A DNA stretch of 64,000 nucleotides from Salpingoeca rosetta (taxonomy: Eukaryota > Protista > Choanoflagellata): the NCBI GenBank assembly GCA_033442325.1, contig JAWQFM010000026.1:532706-596705 (forward strand), read 5' to 3'. Both the position numbers and the translations under genes were made by a program. The stretch's first letter is position 1, and every line of letters starts with the position of its first letter. Shown piece by piece: positions 16,505-24,768 of this stretch. The notes under the pieces are model-generated. The model ran no database searches. It was given only the letters and a program-made list of their open reading frames with translations, and was not told the DNA's origin.

Positions 16505-19500
16505 ATGGACGAGATGGAGGCGTGGATGGCAGAGGCGGGGTTGACAGACAGTGTGAAGAACAAGATTCGAGCTGTTGCCAACGGCATGTCGACCACTAAT
16601 GTCAAGTCAGTCAGAACCCCTTGGCATAATGCAATGTGAGCTACGTTTCTCTGTTTGGTGCTGCGGCTTGCTTGTTGTTTTGCTTTCAGAAACGCTCTCC
16701 TCACAGGCCTGCTGCTACCTTAATGGTTTCAGTTTCAATAAAGCAGGGCTCGGAGACAAAGGTGCCAAGGCGCTGGCAATTGCACTGAACATCAGACCCA
16801 ACAAGGACATCCAAGCATTGTAGTGAGTCGCTCAGTGTGTGTGTATGTGTGTGTATGGGTGGGTGTGGGTGTGGGTGGGTTCGACACACTCTCACTGACT
16901 TTCTGAGTGTATTAAAATGGTTGCTGCGTTATCTGAGTGATTTGTATCGTCTGCTTGCGACGCATGACAATGAATTCGAGTCTGCAGGATGTTCTTCATT
17001 ATGTTGTACCATGCCCTAACCGTTGATGCGGTTTTGTGATGGCGTGGGCGCTGGTTGGTTGTGGTTGCAGCTTGCGCTACAACTCGATCGGAAAGGACGG
17101 CTGTGTTGCACTGGCTGATGCACTGCGCGAGCACACGGGACTGCAAGTACTTAAGTGAGTGCAAAGTGCATGTAGGTGTATATGCCACGGCACAGGCAGT
17201 TTTGTGAATTGATGTGTGGGTGACTTTGTTTGTGTGCCATGGGGGTGCATATGCTCGGTTGGTTAGCTGTGCTTGTGCGTTTGCGGTGTGATGTGCGGTT
17301 GTTCATGTTTGCAGAATGCAACGGAAGCACGTTGACATGCGTTATGCGATATGTTGGTATTGTGTTGCGGTGTTGTGGCGTGTTTTTGTACATGTGTGTG
17401 TGCTCGTCTGTGCATATGTTATGTCTTATGCAGTTTGGGTCACAACTCGGTTGGGAAGGACGGATGTGTTGCACTGGCTGGTGCACTGCGCGAGCACACA
17501 GGACTGCGGAAGCTTGGGTCAGTGAACCATGGTTGTGAGCAGTGTAGAGCGACTGTGTTGTTGAAATGCACGGGGATGGTGATGTATGCACGTTGTTTAA
17601 GTCTGCATGCTTGTGTGCATGCCTGTTGTGAGTGAGCGTGTTCTTGACTCATTTGAATGTGACCGCGTATGCATATCTGTGTGGTGTTGATTGCAGCTTG
17701 AGCAACAACTCGATTGAGAAGGAAGGCTGTGTTGCGTTGGCTGATGCACTGCGCGGACACACTGGATTGCAAGAGCTGTTGTAAGTGCGTCTTGCGTGGT
17801 GAAGCGTTGAAGATTGGAAGTTTATGTGTTCGTGGGTATGTCTGTTGCTACGTTGCAGAAACATGGTTATGCATGCACGCGATGGGGCGTAGCATGCTTG
17901 TGTGCATGACTGTGGTGGGTGAGTGACTCCGTGTTTATTCCAATGTAATCGTGTATGCATATCTGCGTGGTGTTGATTGCAGCTTGGACAACAACTCGAT
18001 TGGGAAGGAAGGCTGTGTTGCGTTGGCTGGTGCACTGCGTGGGCACACGGGACTGCAGCGGCTTGTGTGAGTGCAGCGTGGTAGTAAGAAGCGTCGAGAG
18101 AATGCGTGTACGTTGTACGAGGATGGTGATGTATGCACCTTATTTGACTCTGCATGCTCGTGTGATTGACTGTTGTGAGTGAGTGTGTTCTTGACTCATT
18201 TGAATGTGACCGCGTATGCATATCTGTGTGGTGTGTTGATTGCAGCTTGAACAACAACTCGATTGAGAAGGAAGGCTGTGTTGCGTTGGCTGGTGCACTG
18301 CGCGGACACACGGGACTGCAGTGGCTTGGGTGAGTGCACCTTGGTTGTGAGAAGCGTCGGGAGAATGCGTGTACGCTGCACGAGAATGGTGATGTATGCA
18401 CGTTGTTTGACTCTGCATGCTCGTGTGATTGACTGTTGTGAGTGAGTGTGTTCTTGACTCATTTGAATGTGAGTGTGTGTGTGCACACCTGCGTGGTGTT
18501 GATTGCAGCTTGACCAACAACTCGATTGAGAAGGAAGGCTGTGTTGCGCTGGCTGGTGCACTGCGCGGACACACTGGACTTCAAGAGCTGTAGTAAGTAC
18601 AGCATGCGTTGTGAAGTGTTGTAGTTTGGCCATCCATGTGCGTACGTGAATGTGTTGTTGGAATGCACGAGGATGGTGATGTATGCACGTTGTTTGACTC
18701 TGCATGCTCGTGTGATTGACTGTTGTGCGTGAGTGTGTTCTTGACTCATTTGAATGTGAGTGTGTGTGTGCACACCTGCGTGGTGTTGATTGCAGCTTGG
18801 ACGACAACTCGATTGAGAAGGAAGGCTGTGTTGCGCTGGCTGGTGCACTGCGCGGACACACTGGACTTCAAGAGCTGTAGTAAGTACAGCATGCATGGCG
18901 AAGTGTAATGGTTTGGGCATCCATGTGCGTACGTGAATGTGTTGTTGGAATGCACGAGGATGGTGATGTATGCACGTTGTTTGACTCTGCATGCTCGTGT
19001 GATTGACTGTTGTGAGTGAGTGTGTTCTTGACTCATTTGAATGTGAGTGTGTGTGTGCACACCTGCGTGGTGTTGATTGCAGCTTGAACAACAACTCGAT
19101 TGAGAAGGAAGGCTGTGTTGCGCTGGCTGGTGCACTGCGCGGACACACTGGACTTCAAGAGCTGTAGTAAGTACAGCATGCATGGCGAAGTGTAATGGTT
19201 TGGGCATCCATGTGCGTACGTGAATGTGTTGTTGGAATGCACGAGGATGGTGATGTATGCACGTTGTTTGACTCTGCATGCTCGTGTGATTGACTGTTGT
19301 GCGTGAGTGTGTTCTTGACTCATTTGAATGTGAGTGTGTGTGTGCACACCTGCGTGGTGTTGATTGCAGCTTGAGCAACAACTCGATTGAGAAGGAAGGC
19401 TGTGTTGCGCTGGCTGGTGCACTGCGCGGACACACTGGACTTCAAGAGCTGTTGTAAGTGCAGCATGCATGGCGAAGTGTAATGGTTTGGGCATCCATGT

Positions 19501-22023
19501 GCGTACGTGAATGTGTTGTTGGAATGCACGAGGATGGTGATGTATGCACGTTGTTTGACTCTGCATGCTCGTGTGATTGACTGTTGTGCGTGAGTGTGTT
19601 CTTGACTCATTTGAATGTGAGTGTGTGTGTGCACACCTGCGTGGTGTTGATTGCAGCTTGAGCAACAACTCGATTGAGAAGGAAGGCTGTGTTGCGCTGG
19701 CTGGTGCACTGCGCGGACACACTGGACTTCAAGAGCTGTTGTAAGTGCAGCATGCATGGCGAAGTGTAATGGTTTGGGCATCCATGTGCGTACGTGAATG
19801 TGTTGTTGGAATGCACGAGGATGGTGATGTATGCACGTTGTTTGACTCTGCATGCTCGTGTGATTGACTGTTGTGCGTGAGTGTGTTCTTGACTCATTTG
19901 AATGTGAGTGTGTGTGTGCACACCTGCGTGGTGTTGATTGCAGCTTGAACAACAACTCGATTGAGAAGGAAGGCTGTGTTGCGCTGGCTGGTGCACTGCG
20001 CGGACACACTGGACTTCAAGAGCTGTAGTAAGTACAGCATGCGTTGTGAAGTGTTGTAGTTTGGCCATCCATGTGCGTACGTGAATGTGTTGTTGGAATG
20101 CACGAGGATGGTGATGTATGCACGTTGTTTGACTCTGCATGCTCGTGTGATTGACTGTTGTGAGTGAGTGTGTTCTTGACTCGTTTCAATGTAAGTCCGT
20201 GCATGCCTATCTGTGGTGTGTTGATTGCAGCTTGGACGACAACTCGATTGAGAAGGAAGGCTGTGTTGCGCTGGCTGGTGCACTGCGCGGGCACACAGGA
20301 CTGTATATCCTTGGGTCAGTGAACCTTGGTTGTGAGCAGTGTAGAGCGACTGTATTGCTGCATTGCAGGAGCATGGTGATGCATGTACGCCATTGGGCTT
20401 TGCTTGCTTGTGTGCGTGATGTGGTGGGCGAGTGTGTTCTTGACTCATTTGAATGTGACTGTGTGTGTGCACACCTGCGTGGTGTTGATTGCAGCTTGAG
20501 CAACAACTCGATTGAGAAGGAAGGCTGTGTTGCGCTGGCTGGTGCACTGCGCGAGCATACAAGGCTGCAAACTCTTTGGTTTGTCTATCTTGTATTGTGC
20601 TGCATCGCACTGCGCTTGTGCCGCTCTTGTTTACACTTGCACTGTCACCTCGGATACCCTTGCAATCGCAACGTCGGCCTTGACATGTGCGAATGCCACA
20701 GCTTCTGTTGCCCTCACATCTCCTGTTGTTTGTCTCTTTCAGGCTCCAAGGAATCGGCGATGCAGCTGCCCGCGCGTTTGGCGCGAAATGGCCACCTGAA
20801 GGCAGCGCCAGGCTGTTCCTGTACGTCCCTTTGGGCCAGAATGGTTTCTGTTGGTGTTGCGTCTTGCCTGTCGACCATCCGACGACGCATATGCCCGCCT
20901 CATGCTGTGACGTGTTAATTCTTCCTGCTTGCTGCTTCCAGAACTACTTCTGAACGCGCTGCGTTTGACGAAGGCCAGTGGCTGCAAGCACAAGTGCAGG
21001 TAAATCAGGTCTGCTGTCTATCGTGTTCACCATGGTCACCACTGTCGCATCGACGCCTCCAACATTTTATTTCACGCTCTTTTTGTTGCCTTCTGACGCT
21101 CTTTTCCCTTTTGACTCACGCATGACTGCAGGCACCCAGTGGAAACGACATCGACCTCGCCCGCCTACGTATGTCTTTTGAATGATGCGTGCAAGCATGT
21201 CCGCCAATGTTCTAATGTTGTCTTGATCACATCGGTTGATTGCATGAACCCTCAGAGATACTACCAACGAAACACTATCACCATGACATCTGTGAATGCG
21301 CCCTCGTGCGTCCATGCTTGTGGTGGCCCTTTTCAGGTGAAGAAATCGAGCGCCTTCAACGCGACGTACAGGAGAAGGATCAACAGCTGCAACGATCAGG
21401 TAGAATGGCGTATTGTCTCTTGCTCCCATATCCTGACTTAACGTGTGCGGGAACTGATGCAGAGGCTTCAGTGTCGTCGTTTTCATCCCTCAGACTATCC
21501 TCGGGTATTCACGCCAGCCTGTGTTCACATGTGCGCCCGAATGTTGCGTGTTGTGTGCTGTGTGCTGTCTTCATGTCAGACGAAGAAAACAAGCGCCTTC
21601 GACGCGTGGTGCAGAAGAAGAAGCAGCTGCTGCAGCACAAAGGTCTGGTCTGTTGTGCACTGAGGTGTCGTGTTCGGGTCTTGGAGCTGAGGGTGCATTC
21701 AGCCCATCCTGTTTCACCTCTCAGACTTATCCAGTTATCCCACAATCACGTGTTTACATGTGCGTCTGATTGTTGTGTGTAATGTCTTCCATCGCTTTTC
21801 AGGTGACGAAGTCCAGCGCCTTCAACGCGACGTGCAGGAGAAAGATCAGCAGCTTCAACGAAACGGTGGGCTAGCGTATGGTCACACTCCTATCCTGTAG
21901 TCTTATTCGCAGTTATTGTTGCGGGAGTGAGCAAAACTTCTGAGGGTGCATTGTGCTCATGCTCTATCAATTCTCAGAAGCTCACTGCTGCACTGATAAC
22001 TGGCTCACCAACCATCTTTCATC

Positions 22024-22122
<99 letters not shown>

Positions 22123-23796
22123 GTGCTCCCGTGAGCACAGACGAGGAGAAAAATCGCCTTTCACAACGCGTGGGCAAGTTGCAGACCGCCACCGCCAAAA
22201 AAGACAGCGCAATCACCCAACTTGGTATGTGCTTGGAGTGGGTGTGGACGTGCTGCGATTGCCATTCCTACTGATTATCTGTACACATCCCTCAACTGAT
22301 ACAAGAGTAACCTGACATTCCTTTCTTTGCCTCCCCCTCACCGTCCATGACTCTCAATTTCGCACATCTGCAGAGAAACGGCTGCGTCAACTGGAAGACC
22401 AAGCAGGTGCGTGTGTGTGTGTGTGTGTGTGCGCGCGCGCGCGTGTGTGTGCCTGTTTGTGTGCGTGCTCCCCACAACAAGTACGAACGTCGGTGCGCTC
22501 TCATCATTTTGCTTGGCCGCATTCCATCGGCTCTCACCATTTCTCTTGCACTTTCTCCTTCCAATGCCCGCTCTCAACAATGATGCAGAGTCCTTCTTCA
22601 ACCTCAACCTGGACCCAGCCCGCTTCACGACGAAGAACCGCGTCAGAGACAACAAGGGCAAGCCCGTCAAGGGTGCGTTCGGCAAGCTGTACCGCAGCAC
22701 GCTTGCTGGGCACGACGTGGCGCTGAAGGAAGTGGACGATGTTGAAGCGCGACCACGATTACAGCACCTGCTGACTGAGATGTACAGCACGACAGCAAGT
22801 GATGTTGACAGCAAGCGTGTGTTGCGAGAAGTGGCCGTCCTTGCGTCGCTCCGCCATCCGAACATCGTGCCGTTCCTCGGTCTCTGTTACGACAACGACC
22901 GCAACACGCTCTCCTTCGTGCTGAGCTGGGCGGAGAACGGGTCCCTGTACGACTACACACACGTGCACAAGAAAAACCTGAGTGATGTTGACAAGCTGCG
23001 CATCTTGAGCGAGGTGGCGGCTGCCATGGAGTTCCTGCATGCACACAACGTCGTTCATCGCGACCTCAAGTCGCCCAACGTGCTGCTGGACGCATCCCTC
23101 TCTGCCAAGGTGACGGATTTTGGCCTGAGCGCGTTCGTCTCAGAGGACGCATCTACGATGACACATGTTCGCGGCACGCGGTTCTGGGAATCGCCCGAGC
23201 AGCTTTTTGGACACGACCCTCGTGCAGACACGGACGTGTTCTCCTTTGGCTGCGTGGTGTGGGAGGTGTGGTTTGGCGTCGTTCCTTGGCACCACGGGCC
23301 GTACAGCGAGAAGGGTATCGTGTTTGGCGACCTTGTCTTCAAGTACAGCAAACACGAGTACCTGCCGCTTGATGAAGAGATCAATGGACGGCGATTGACA
23401 CCAGCGCTTCAGGCGCTGCTTCGCGGGAGTTTTGATGCGAGCGGCAACCGGGTTGATTTTTCTCAACTGCACGCCGCCCTCAAGTCGCGACACAAGAAAG
23501 CCAGTGAGCAGCAGGCGGACGATTTGCGGGAGCAGCACTTGCTGCTGCACGGACCACCAGATGCGGTGTGGAAGTTTCCACAGCAGCTGCTGGCTGCGGT
23601 TGAGGCAGCCCAGCTGTCGACGCGCCAATCTGTCTACATTGCACCACTTCAACTTGACGAGGACGCCGTTACTGAGGTGCGTGCGTGTGTGTGTGTGTGT
23701 GTGCCTTGGTTCTTCCCCATGCACCCAACGATTTCACCTCAGCTTGTTGCCAGCATTGTGCTCTTCGTAGATTTCTCACTTTCGCATCCAATGTGA

Positions 23797-23923: not shown

Positions 23924-24768
23924 TCTCGCTCGCTCGCTCTCTCTCTCTCTCGTCCACCCTGCAGCTTGTCCATGCCGCTGGTGGCCGGACCGCCGAGCAG
24001 AATCCGCGCGAACCGTTTGGCCGCACATTGTGCCGCGTCGCCATCACGTGGTGCGATCAGAAGCTCGTCGCCTTCAACGGCGCCCTGCACCGCAACACCA
24101 CCCGCTACCGCGGCCACCTCACCAGCGCCGGCCACCCGTTTGCGCCCAAGTACGACCACGACACCACGACGGGCCAAGCGACAGATGCTGAGGAGCGGGC
24201 GGTGCTGGAGCGTGTCACCCGCGTTGGCGTGTACAGCATGCTCGATCCCTCCCTGCTGCCAAAGGACCCGCCACTGCGCATCCAGCGCGTGTTCCACGGC
24301 GTTGGGTCATTTGACGCCGTCCTTGGCATCCTGGGTGGCGACTTTGCACAACTGCAGAAGACGGACAAAGGGTGGTACGGTGCTGGCTTCTACTTTACAC
24401 CAGATCTCGACTACGCGCGTGCGTACGCTCAACCATGCAATGTTAGCGCAGACCACGACAACGTCCCAGCTGATCTGCGCTGCCTCAACCTTGAGCCAGG
24501 CAAGCCTTACCGGATTGTGCTGGCGTGCGATGTCATGTACGGCAACCCATATCCCGTGCTGGATCTGCATTTGAATGGGAAGCCGTTGGCGGGAGGCCAC
24601 GACGCGCACGTGGCAGTGGTTGACTTCACCAGCGGCAAAGTCAAAGCTGCACAGCCGTTCGAAACGCATTCGCAGTGGACCCAGGGCGATAATGTGCCAG
24701 CTGCGGAGATTGTGGTGACAGACCCTTCGTGCGTTCTTGTGCGGGCCATTCTTGTGTTTGAGGCCTGA
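16505..24768 (+). CDS. Cytosolic LRR (RI/NLRC3-like 28-aa repeats) - coiled coil - TKL-family protein kinase - PARP-like ADP-ribosyltransferase protein, about 25 exons
   Basis: ATG at 16505 ([13 protein letters not shown]..). LRR exon 16733-16822, then 13 x 84-nt LRR exons (17071-20578) and coiled-coil exons 21337-22406. Kinase exon 22589-23676: [34 protein letters not shown]. Last exon 23965-24768: [34 protein letters not shown]. Splice phases checked by hand are compatible from the LRR array to the stop. No signal peptide or TM segment seen. Confidence 0.85.
17071..20578 (+). repeat. Tandem array of 13 LRR exon+intron units (84-nt phase-2 exons; exact 287-bp period from 18509 to 20231)
   Basis: Exon starts: 17071, 17434, 17697, 17983, 18246, 18509, 18796, 19083, 19370, 19657, 19944, 20231, 20495. 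Each is preceded by TGCAG and followed by a GT donor. Consensus [28 protein letters not shown]. Confidence 0.95.

What the first reader, a model, noticed from the sequence alone, without database searches (positions are those of the whole stretch)
17071..20578. LRR exon cassettes with diversity confined to the ligand-facing strand that spans each splice junction
Seen: the exon core ([21 protein letters not shown]) and, in the central units, even the introns are nearly identical. The junction segment LxxLx|LxxN varies by amino-acid changes: QVLN|LGH, RKLG|LSN, QELF|LDN, QRLV|LNN, QWLG|LTN, QELY|LDD, QELY|LNN, QELY|LSN, QELF|LSN, QELF|LNN, QELY|LDD, YILG|LSN, QTLW. Established: these x positions form the concave binding surface of LRR solenoids, and similar one-repeat-per-exon hypervariable arrays occur in brown-algal ROCO genes. 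Inference: diversifying selection on binding specificity. All exons are 84 nt and phase 2-2, so any skipping stays in frame and builds a new hybrid strand, which would allow a combinatorial repertoire.
Basis: partly seen in the sequence, partly recalled or inferred. Interest (0 to 1): 0.85.

Follow-up and report, generated by a model that had tools for sequence, protein, structure and literature searches.

The report
Recently amplified variable LRR exon array
A gene of the choanoflagellate Salpingoeca rosetta carries 13 tandem 84-base exons, each encoding one leucine-rich repeat, that were recently copied together with their introns and differ almost only at the five surface residues of the binding strand, the signature of a fast-evolving recognition receptor already known from plants, brown algae and animal NOD-like receptors.

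Summary
There are 13 exons of exactly 84 nt, AG/GT-flanked, with a codon split 2|1 at each junction. Six exon+intron units of 287 bp are 95-100% identical, and two are identical.

RNA reads and RNA contigs show the gene is transcribed and spliced at the predicted sites, exon to next exon.

The five x positions of LxxLxLxxN hold 253 of 381 pairwise amino-acid differences. Their replacement divergence (0.36-0.39) exceeds synonymous (0.21) and intron (0.13) divergence. Omega is about 2.5-3.5 there and 0.2-0.3 on the scaffold. An AlphaFold model puts these residues on the beta-strand of a ribonuclease-inhibitor-type solenoid.

The gene (public product P0120) reads LRR, coiled coil, TKL kinase, PARP-like domain. 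It belongs to a family found almost only in Salpingoeca rosetta proteins.

Diversifying selection is supported. Combinatorial exon skipping is not supported, but read depth was low.

The kind is known: brown-algal ROCO genes, Tetrahymena LRR genes, human NOD/NLRC exon modularity. First-stage readers of this scan also noted similar cassettes elsewhere in this genome (unchecked).

The parts
16505..16605 (+). First coding exon: start codon and short N-terminal helices ([13 protein letters not shown]...TTNV), ending with 2 nt of a split codon
   Evidence: In-frame stop upstream. Joint 16605>16733 (GT..AG) in RNA runs X34, X35 and X17. Matches residues 1-33 of P0120.
16733..16822 (+). LRR0 exon, 90 nt, same phase: first, divergent RI-type repeat
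   Evidence: RNA contig X17 record 9 runs 16733-16822 and then 17071-17154. Translation. The public model P0120 uses a donor 3 nt upstream instead.
17071..18329 (+). Cassette exons 1-5 (17071-17154, 17434-17517, 17697-17780, 17983-18066, 18246-18329) with introns of 279, 179, 202 and 179 nt between them, followed by the 179-nt intron 5 (18330-18508): the older, more diverged units
   Evidence: Coordinates and splice signals. RNA joints 17154>17434, 17516/7>17696/7, 17780>17983, 18066>18246 and 18328/9>18508/9.
18377..20302 (+). Young repeated block: 6.7 copies of a 287-bp unit (84-nt exon + 203-nt intron) holding cassette exons 6-11 and the 5' two-thirds of exon 12. The block starts inside intron 5 and ends inside the core of exon 12.
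   Evidence: TRF 97% matches. Unit identities 95-100%. Variable columns listed. Units 9 and 10 identical.
20231..20578 (+). Cassette exon 12 (20231-20314, a chimera of the young 5' part and an old 3' part), intron 12 (180 nt) and cassette exon 13 (20495-20578, donor GTTTGT)
   Evidence: Joint 20577/8>20742/3 in RNA. Variant allele of exon 12 at 20288, 20291 and 20304 in runs X1 and X34.
20743..20820 (+). C-terminal cap exon of the LRR domain ([25 protein letters not shown]), 78 nt
   Evidence: RNA joints 20577>20742 and 20820>20942. P0120 residues 316-341.
20942..22408 (+). Linker and coiled-coil exons: 20942-20999, 21132-21170, 21337-21399, 21579-21644, 21805-21866, 22141-22225 (supported by a loose-end sequence of an RNA contig only), 22373-22408
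   Evidence: P0120 mapping. RNA joints 20994>21127 and 21168>21337, plus the X17 loose end that joins the 21805-21866 exon to the 22141 exon.
22588..23676 (+). Exon encoding the TKL-type protein kinase domain
   Evidence: Pfam Pkinase E = 2.8e-40 and PK_Tyr_Ser-Thr E = 1.3e-38. P0120 residues 447-809.
23965..24768 (+). Last exon: PARP-like ADP-ribosyltransferase-fold domain and stop codon
   Evidence: Pfam PARP E = 0.004, below the cut-off. AlphaFold2 pLDDT 87. All top 50 Foldseek hits are PARP ART domains, with TM only 0.33-0.42. P0120 residues 810-1076.

Best explanation
This is the sensor domain of a cytosolic multidomain protein of the choanoflagellate Salpingoeca rosetta. The domain order is short N-terminal helices, 14 ribonuclease-inhibitor-type LRRs, a coiled coil, a TKL kinase and a PARP-like domain.

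Shown: each 28-residue repeat is one 84-nt exon, and the exon border lies inside the beta-strand. This gene design is shared with other members of the family.

Shown: in this one gene the array has recently grown. The duplicated unit is 287 bp, exon plus intron.

Inferred from the pattern: growth was by unequal homologous recombination or gene conversion between units. The repeated block begins inside intron 5 and ends inside exon 12, two units are identical, and the central units are more alike than the edge units.

Shown as a statistical excess, inferred as to cause: against this homogenised background, replacement changes accumulate or are retained at the five solvent-exposed positions of the concave strand (x25, x26, x28, x2, x3). 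They do so faster than synonymous or intron changes. This is the pattern expected from diversifying selection on a ligand-binding surface.

Shown for exons 1-6 and from exon 13 onward, ambiguous in the identical middle: the mRNA is spliced exon to next exon.

Inferred: the LRR surface binds a variable partner, microbial or self, and signals through the kinase and PARP-like domains.
For: - Exon anatomy.
- Repeat structure.
- Transcription, strand and GT..AG junctions.
- Organism and annotated product.
- Domains: Pfam LRR_6 62.7 bits (cut-off 23.4) and Pkinase.
- Fold: the strand is x26-L-x28-L-x2, and the top Foldseek hit is ribonuclease inhibitor at TM 0.71.
- Excess replacement change: x-codon pN 0.388 against scaffold pS 0.205 and pN 0.034. 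pN(x) 0.361 against intron 0.133 overall, and 0.10 against 0.006 for the youngest units. Omega at x is 2.5 with p = 0.0056 and 3.45 with p = 2e-6.
- Ancestral cassette design: the P0002 gene on C3 has three 84-nt exons with the same split codon. Two loci on C4 have a 90-nt exon followed by an 84-nt exon.
- Expansion specific to this gene: the inverted paralogue 18 kb upstream of the window has only two cassettes.
- Sensor swapping on a constant kinase and PARP-like part: LRR_6 or ankyrin repeats at the N-terminus, and one member reads LRR-Roc-COR-TIR-PARP-like.
Against: - The test rests on one gene with 13 short, recombining repeats. Pairwise and tree counts are not independent, and recombination inflates homoplasy.
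- The young units need as few as five replacement events. Most of their x2-x3 states (SN, NN) also occur in older exons (DD and TN do not), so short conversion patches rather than new mutations could have produced them.
- Against intron columns alone, the young-unit excess is only p = 0.087.
- No ligand, no population sample and no orthologue from another species was available.
- Copy number in the assembly may be off: k-mer depth of one DNA run over 18825-18989 is 97 per assembled copy, against 32-76 for single-copy pieces.
Confidence: 0.62

Rival explanations
1. Neutral reading. The scaffold is under purifying selection and is homogenised by concerted evolution. The five surface positions are simply unconstrained, so their diversity reflects relaxed constraint and not positive selection.
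For: Scaffold omega is 0.18-0.28, which shows strong constraint elsewhere. Surface positions of LRR strands tolerate most residues (general knowledge of LRR structure). The number of independent events in the young units is small.
Against: Relaxed constraint predicts a replacement rate at x equal to the neutral rate. Observed pN(x) is 1.9 times scaffold pS and 2.7 times intron divergence, and it is higher in 59 of 66 pairs. Units 7-10 differ at 2 of 15 x columns but only 2 of 272 other columns, p = 0.014.
Confidence: 0.22
2. Symmetric 84-nt exons are skipped in many combinations, giving hybrid strands and a repertoire of receptor isoforms from one gene.
For: All cassettes are in the same phase, so any skip is in frame. 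The public gene model P0120 lacks cassettes 1-3 and 7. LRR exon skipping is documented for human NLRP3 (PMC6642158) and for brown-algal ROCO genes (PMC11378527).
Against: RNA runs X34, X35 and X17 gave only joints between neighbouring exons, including exons 1-2, 2-3, 3-4, 4-5 and 5-6, which the public model omits in part. No skipping joint was listed. The public model may come from collapsed transcript assembly of near-identical exons.
Confidence: 0.08
3. Assembly problem. The array's copy number or unit order in this assembly is wrong (collapsed or expanded), so the detailed pattern of the central units is partly artefactual.
For: Two units are identical and six are 95-100% alike, which is hard for short or Sanger reads. 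DNA run X1 has 1.3-3 times the k-mer depth expected from the assembled copy number on 18825-18989. X1 contigs break throughout the array.
Against: The distinct x-codon variants sit in unit-specific contexts. Sixteen runs hold 74-81% of the stretch's sampled words. RNA reads confirm the outer junctions. A wrong copy number would not remove the concentration of variation at x positions in exons 1-6, 12 and 13.
Confidence: 0.3
4. Ongoing clonal or somatic remodelling. The array recombines so often that culture lines or cells differ, giving a population-level repertoire, as was hypothesised for brown algae.
For: Exon 12 has a second allele with three clustered changes: two synonymous, plus Y>H at x25. 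It is found in DNA run X1 and RNA run X34 but not in RNA run X35, and it is absent from the assembly. X34 also carries a first-repeat sequence that mixes letters of this gene and its paralogue.
Against: This is two observations in a few runs of unknown strain history. They are equally explained by ordinary strain polymorphism or by a paralogous unit missing from the assembly. No within-run mixture was shown at DNA level.
Confidence: 0.06

Closest known systems
Human NOD/NLRC-type LRR exon modularity (Hoss et al. 2019, PMC6642158)
   Same: RI-class LRRs with one 28-residue repeat per exon. Exons are frame-preserving. The exon-exon border always lies at the same place inside the beta-sheet. The fold matches RI, NLRC4, NOD2 and NLRP LRR domains.
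   Different: This protein has no NACHT domain. The effector part is coiled coil, TKL kinase and PARP-like domain. The cassettes are recent copies that include their introns. I did not test whether the border falls on the very same codon as in the human genes, because no human sequence was handled.
Ectocarpus/Saccharina LRR-ROCO genes with shuffled LRR exons (Zambounis et al. 2012, PMC3341825; Teng et al. 2024, PMC11378527)
   Same: One LRR per exon. All introns are phase 2. Exon duplication and shuffling occur. Positively selected sites lie on the concave face. These are candidate immune receptors.
   Different: The algal exons are 72 bp and encode 23-24-residue repeats of another LRR class, attached to Roc-COR GTPase. 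There the pattern is family-wide and splice variants are recorded. Here the close copies are limited to this gene and its paralogue, and no splice variants were seen.
[quoted passage not shown] 2019, PMC6564038)
   Same: Uniform short LRR exons flanked by phase-2 introns. Growth is by unequal crossing-over. Some are fused to protein kinase domains.
   Different: Tetrahymena has thousands of genes and about 72,000 such exons with 30-residue repeats. Diversity focused on particular sites was not the point of that paper.
Hypervariable xxLxLxx residues of plant NLR and receptor-like LRR proteins (own knowledge: Parniske et al. 1997; Michelmore and Meyers 1998)
   Same: Replacement changes concentrate at the solvent-exposed x positions of the strand. 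Repeat number changes by unequal crossing-over.
   Different: Plant LRR domains are mostly encoded in large exons and belong to another LRR class. The comparison is recalled from memory and was not tested here.
Lamprey variable lymphocyte receptors (own knowledge; cited in PMC3341825)
   Same: LRR cassettes with a variable concave face serve as recognition modules.
   Different: VLR diversity comes from somatic, cytidine-deaminase-linked cassette copying into an incomplete germline gene. Here the gene is complete in the germline and nothing somatic was shown.

Membership tests
Ribonuclease-inhibitor-type (RI-like) LRR domain, Pfam LRR_6 | Sequence match to LRR_6 above the curated cut-off | tested here: met
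   P0120 scores 62.7 bits against a cut-off of 23.4.
Ribonuclease-inhibitor-type (RI-like) LRR domain, Pfam LRR_6 | 28-29-residue period with LxxLxLxxN followed by a helix, and a strand/helix horseshoe fold | tested here: met
   The period is 28 residues. The AlphaFold2 model alternates 5-residue strands with 11-residue helices. The best PDB match is mouse ribonuclease inhibitor 3tsr_E at TM 0.71.
NLR (NACHT/NB-ARC + LRR) receptors | Central NACHT or NB-ARC nucleotide-binding domain | tested here: not met
   No such Pfam hit in P0120, only LRR families, coiled-coil-like matches and Pkinase. The resemblance is limited to the LRR module and its exon design.
ROCO proteins | Roc GTPase plus COR domain | tested here: not met
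   Absent from P0120. A relative that shares the C-terminal domain, P0008, does have Roc and COR-A.
Exon-cassette LRR receptors under diversifying selection (the Ectocarpus ROCO kind) | One repeat per symmetric exon, all in the same phase | tested here: met
   13 exons of 84 nt with a codon split 2|1. Junctions confirmed by RNA.
Exon-cassette LRR receptors under diversifying selection (the Ectocarpus ROCO kind) | Exon duplication together with flanking intron | tested here: met
   287-bp units at 95-100% identity; units 9 and 10 are identical.
Exon-cassette LRR receptors under diversifying selection (the Ectocarpus ROCO kind) | Omega above 1 at concave-face sites | tested here: met
   Omega at x is 2.5-3.45 with p = 0.006 to 2e-6, by counting methods that do not model recombination. 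pN(x) exceeds intron divergence in 59 of 66 pairs.
Exon-cassette LRR receptors under diversifying selection (the Ectocarpus ROCO kind) | Splice variants with different cassette content | tested here: inconclusive
   Only consecutive joints at 1-5x depth. The public model omits four cassettes.
Exon-cassette LRR receptors under diversifying selection (the Ectocarpus ROCO kind) | Exchange of cassettes between loci of a gene family | tested here: inconclusive
   Close copies occur only in this gene and its inverted paralogue. The LRR region of the two paralogues is 78-86% identical while their flanks are 95-96% identical, which fits either module replacement or conversion of the flanks.
TKL-group protein kinases | Protein kinase catalytic domain | tested here: met
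   Pkinase E = 2.8e-40. HRDLKSPN and DFG motifs are present in the 22411-23796 open frame. Relatives are named TKL protein kinase by NCBI.
PARP-type ADP-ribosyltransferases | PARP catalytic fold with the H-Y-E triad | tested here: inconclusive
   Pfam PARP scores 17.1 bits, below the 26.7 cut-off. There is no PDB sequence match. The model has pLDDT 87 and all top 50 Foldseek hits are PARP ART domains, but TM is only 0.33-0.42. Y138 is invariant and E243 nearly invariant in 16 relatives. Activity is untested.

The most novel reading that the evidence does not exclude
[quoted passage not shown] The design is one 28-residue repeat per 84-nt exon with the border inside the strand. Here the sensor is wired to a kinase and a PARP-like domain instead of a NACHT domain. 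The array is being remodelled fast enough that culture lines already differ. On this reading the exon-modular LRR sensor predates animals, and this gene would be an experimentally tractable pre-metazoan immune-type receptor.
Probability: 0.25. Interest if true: 0.75.

Novelty: new member of a known kind. Interest (0 to 1): 0.52.

Why it matters
Choanoflagellates are the reference point for what existed before animals. A published survey found no canonical NLRs in them: NACHT+LRR proteins exist but lack the Death or CARD domains of animal NLRs (PMC6040629).

This gene shows three things:
- The RI-type LRR module, with the same one-repeat-per-exon layout described for human NOD/NLRC genes, exists in Salpingoeca rosetta.
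- It is attached there to a family-specific kinase plus PARP-like output.
- In at least one gene it evolves in the way recognition receptors do: recent cassette amplification, with replacement changes focused on the binding face.

S. rosetta can be genetically manipulated (own knowledge), so the idea that this is a recognition receptor can be tested directly.

The finding does not reveal a new principle. The same pattern is published for brown algae, and related exon architectures are published for Tetrahymena and human NLRs.

Tried and rejected
- Exon skipping. The 'goes back 84' joint 20027>19944 is an ordinary exon-exon join between identical exons and not a rearrangement.
- Close copies elsewhere in the genome. 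The DNA search with one unit and the protein search with one exon found only this array, its inverted paralogue and two distant loci on C4. A Pfam LRR_6 scan of the genome was too insensitive to be useful.
- Donor for the variant exon-12 allele. A pattern search found none in the assembly.
- Sequence search of the PARP-like domain against PDB. Nothing was found.
- Literature search for this family in S. rosetta (LRR + PARP + TKL). It returned no relevant paper. A search for '84 bp' NLRC exons returned nothing; the fact came from PMC6642158 instead.
- Diversity-generating-retroelement-like mutagenesis. I considered it because the variable codons are AAC-rich and all young-unit changes are at A positions. 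I rejected it as unsupported: no template/variable repeat pair is seen, the adjacent structural AAC (N4) and other A-rich codons are invariant, and no such system is known in eukaryotes. I made no reverse-transcriptase search.
- Spliced full-length protein. I did not type it into any tool. The public product P0120, which lacks four cassettes, was used for the fold instead.
- Human NLR genes. None were fetched or compared.

Full report
WHAT IS THERE

The stretch is a eukaryotic gene on the + strand. Between 17071 and 20578 lie 13 exons of exactly 84 nt. Each is preceded by AG and followed by GT. The first base of each exon completes a codon begun by the last two bases of the exon before.

Each exon encodes one 28-residue repeat: L-x-x-N-S-I-E/[21 protein letters not shown]-x-x-L-x.

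A 90-nt exon in the same phase (16733-16822) encodes a divergent first repeat. A 78-nt exon (20743-20820) encodes the C-terminal cap. The open frame starts at 16505.

IS IT REAL AND EXPRESSED?

Sixteen public runs (about nine studies hold the stretch or part of it) carry 74-81% of the sampled words of the stretch.

I laid 5,201 bases on two raw-read RNA runs, one run of RNA-like contigs and one DNA run.
- GT..AG joints were found at 16605>16733, 17154>17434, 17516/7>17696/7, 17780>17983, 18066>18246, 18328/9>18508/9, 20577/8>20742/3, 20820>20942, 20994>21127 and 21168>21337.
- One RNA contig runs 16733-16822 directly into 17071-17154.
- First mates lie on the minus strand, as expected for a + strand gene in a usual stranded library.
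- Inside the near-identical middle of the array the only joint listed is 'goes back 84' (20027>19944). That is what an ordinary join between two exons of identical sequence looks like.
- No exon-skipping joint was listed. Depth was only about 1-5x. Reads were 101 nt, so skips among identical exons would be invisible.

ORGANISM AND GENE

The C-terminal open frame (24028-24768) found a family of proteins that NCBI and UniProt name as Salpingoeca rosetta proteins. One of them lies on a contig of 1,067,092 bases, the length of the window's own contig C26.

The public product of this gene is P0120 (1076 aa). Its order is N-terminal helices, LRRs, coiled coil, TKL-type kinase, PARP-like domain.

That public model omits cassettes 1-3 and 7 and one coiled-coil exon, and it uses a donor 3 nt upstream in the first-repeat exon. 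The RNA data contain cassettes 1-6 joined in order. With all cassettes the protein would have about 1,190 residues.

About 15 S. rosetta proteins, plus three transcriptome-derived (EukProt) entries whose species was not identified, share the kinase plus C-terminal domain. Beyond them only the kinase domain finds relatives. The N-terminal sensor is LRR_6 in most members and ankyrin repeats in some. One member reads LRR-Roc-COR-TIR followed by the same C-terminal domain.

The C-terminal domain models well (pLDDT 87). All 50 best Foldseek hits are PARP ART domains, but TM-scores are low (0.33-0.42) and Pfam PARP is below its cut-off. I therefore call it PARP-like and leave activity open.

HOW THE ARRAY AROSE

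Tandem Repeats Finder reports 6.7 copies of a 287-bp unit at 97% identity from 18377 to 20302. The block therefore begins inside intron 5 and ends inside the core of exon 12. Exon 12 is a chimera of a young 5' part and an old 3' part.

Units 9 and 10 are identical. Units 7-10 differ at four of 287 columns. The edge units 6 and 11 carry a different intron haplotype. Breakpoints out of register with exons, identical neighbours, and a homogeneous centre with diverged edges are the usual marks of unequal crossing-over and gene conversion in tandem arrays. This is an inference.

The cassette design itself is older than the expansion. The gene of relative P0002 on contig C3 has three 84-nt LRR exons with the same split codon. 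Two loci on C4 have the 90-nt then 84-nt pattern.

An inverted paralogue 18 kb upstream of the window has the same 5' UTR, first exon and first repeat, but only two cassettes. The two paralogues are 95-96% identical in the UTR, kinase, PARP-like exon and 3' flank. They are only 78-86% identical from intron 0 to about 21209. So the sensor region has either been replaced or has escaped the homogenisation that affects the rest.

WHERE THE VARIATION SITS

Across the 13 exons, the five x positions of LxxLxLxxN (x25, x26, x28, x2, x3) have 3-7 residue states each. Six scaffold positions have two states. Seventeen positions are invariant.

The x positions hold 253 of 381 pairwise amino-acid differences. 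Only 3 of 98,280 possible five-position sets reach that total.

The figures are:
- Nei-Gojobori proportions: pN 0.388 at x codons, against pS 0.205 and pN 0.034 on the scaffold.
- Comparison with the intron that lies physically between the x residues of each junction: mean pN(x) 0.361 against 0.133, higher in 59 of 66 pairs. For the youngest units it is 0.10 against 0.006.
- Minimal state changes: omega(x) = 2.5, binomial p = 0.0056.
- Changes counted on a tree built from scaffold and introns with the x codons masked: omega(x) = 3.45, omega(scaffold) = 0.28, p = 2e-6.
- The six young units alone: the only variable exon columns are 5, 6, 8 and 84, all replacement changes in x codons. That is 4/15 x columns against 0/69 other exon columns, p = 0.0007. 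Against intron columns alone it is 4/15 against 22/203, p = 0.087.

These counts ignore recombination and the repeats are few, so I treat the result as good but not conclusive support for diversifying selection. Pure relaxation of constraint predicts a rate equal to the neutral rate, not above it.

STRUCTURE

AlphaFold2 on P0120:1-345, without an alignment, gives pLDDT 81.5 and pTM 0.79. The model alternates 5-residue strands and 11-residue helices. Strand 89-93 is R-L-V-L-N, that is x26-L27-x28-L1-x2, so the strand does span the splice junction.

The best PDB match is mouse ribonuclease inhibitor (TM 0.71). RanGAP, NLRC4, NOD2 and NLRP LRR domains follow.

That the x side chains of such strands face the concave, ligand-binding side is established knowledge for LRR proteins. 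I could not inspect coordinates.

STRAIN DIFFERENCES

DNA run X1 and RNA run X34, but not RNA run X35, carry an exon-12 variant with three changes within 17 nt: two synonymous, plus Y>H at x25. This sequence is absent from the assembly.

X34 also shows a first-repeat sequence that mixes letters of this gene and its paralogue.

K-mer depth of X1 over 18825-18989 is 97 per assembled copy, against 32-76 for single-copy pieces. So copy number may differ or be under-assembled.

These are hints of polymorphism by conversion, nothing more.

COMPARISON WITH WHAT IS KNOWN

- Hoss et al. 2019 (PMC6642158) describe strict exon modularity of RI-class LRRs in human NLRs. Most NOD and NLRC genes have one 28-residue LRR per exon, the border always lies at the same place in the beta-sheet, and exon skipping occurs in NLRP3.
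- Zambounis et al. 2012 (PMC3341825) and Teng et al. 2024 (PMC11378527) describe 72-bp phase-2 LRR exons in brown-algal ROCO genes, with exon shuffling, positive selection on the concave face and splice variants.
- Xiong et al. 2019 (PMC6564038) describe tens of thousands of 90-bp phase-2 LRR exons in Tetrahymena that grow by unequal crossing-over.
- Richter et al. 2018 (PMC6040629) found NACHT+LRR proteins in choanoflagellates, but none with the Death or CARD domains of animal NLRs.

The present array is therefore a new member of a known kind. What is new is the lineage, the partner domains (kinase plus PARP-like, no NACHT, no Roc-COR) and the very recent amplification within one gene.

First-stage readers of this scan also noted one-LRR-per-exon cassettes on other pieces of this genome. 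I did not check those notes.

VERDICT

- The selection reading is supported.
- The combinatorial-splicing reading is unsupported.
- Interest is moderate.

Noticed in passing
G000:C26:509049-515562 (minus strand; loci L032/L033), 18-24 kb upstream of the window: An inverted paralogue of the whole gene with only two LRR cassettes. The public annotation splits it into P0126 (578 aa) and P0001/PTSG_08612 (367 aa). It is 95-96% identical to this gene in the UTR, kinase, PARP-like exon and 3' flank, but only 78-86% identical around the LRR and cap region.
   Followed up: partly
window 16819-16822, 17071-17780, 18796-18879, 22141-22225: The public gene model P0120 omits cassettes 1-3 and 7 and the coiled-coil exon 22141-22225, and it uses a donor 3 nt upstream in the first-repeat exon. 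RNA reads and contigs include cassettes 1-3; the 21866>22141 join rests only on a loose-end sequence of an RNA contig. The annotation probably needs correction.
   Followed up: partly
window 20288, 20291, 20304 (cassette exon 12): A second allele with three clustered changes (CGC>CGT, GGG>GGA, TAT>CAT = Y>H at an x position). It is present in DNA run X1 and RNA run X34, not in RNA run X35, and is absent from the assembly.
   Followed up: partly
window 16733-16760 (first-repeat exon): Reads of RNA run X34 continue past 16605 into a sequence that combines letters of this gene with letters of its paralogue. This suggests a conversion-derived variant in that strain, or a third copy.
   Followed up: no
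window 21337-21399, 21579-21644, 21805-21866: The coiled coil is also built from short, similar exons ([19 protein letters not shown]-like). Exons 1 and 3 of the set are close enough that RNA and DNA contigs mis-lay between them ('goes back 65').
   Followed up: no
P0008 (PTSG_11903), P0011, P0127, P0014: The same PARP-like C-terminal domain is combined with other sensor and signalling modules: LRR-Roc-COR-TIR in P0008, and ankyrin repeats in place of LRRs in P0011, P0127 and P0014 (with the kinase in P0011 and P0127; P0014 shows no kinase hit). The family swaps its N-terminal repeat domain.
   Followed up: partly
window 16828-16885, 14769-14906, 22027-22120 and many others: Long (TG)n/(CA)n microsatellites are very common in the introns and intergenic DNA of this window. 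Reads appear cut at 16828-16885.
   Followed up: no
window 18825-18989: The k-mer depth of DNA run X1 is about 1.3-3 times what the assembled copy number predicts. The young units may be more numerous than assembled, or may vary between cultures.
   Followed up: partly
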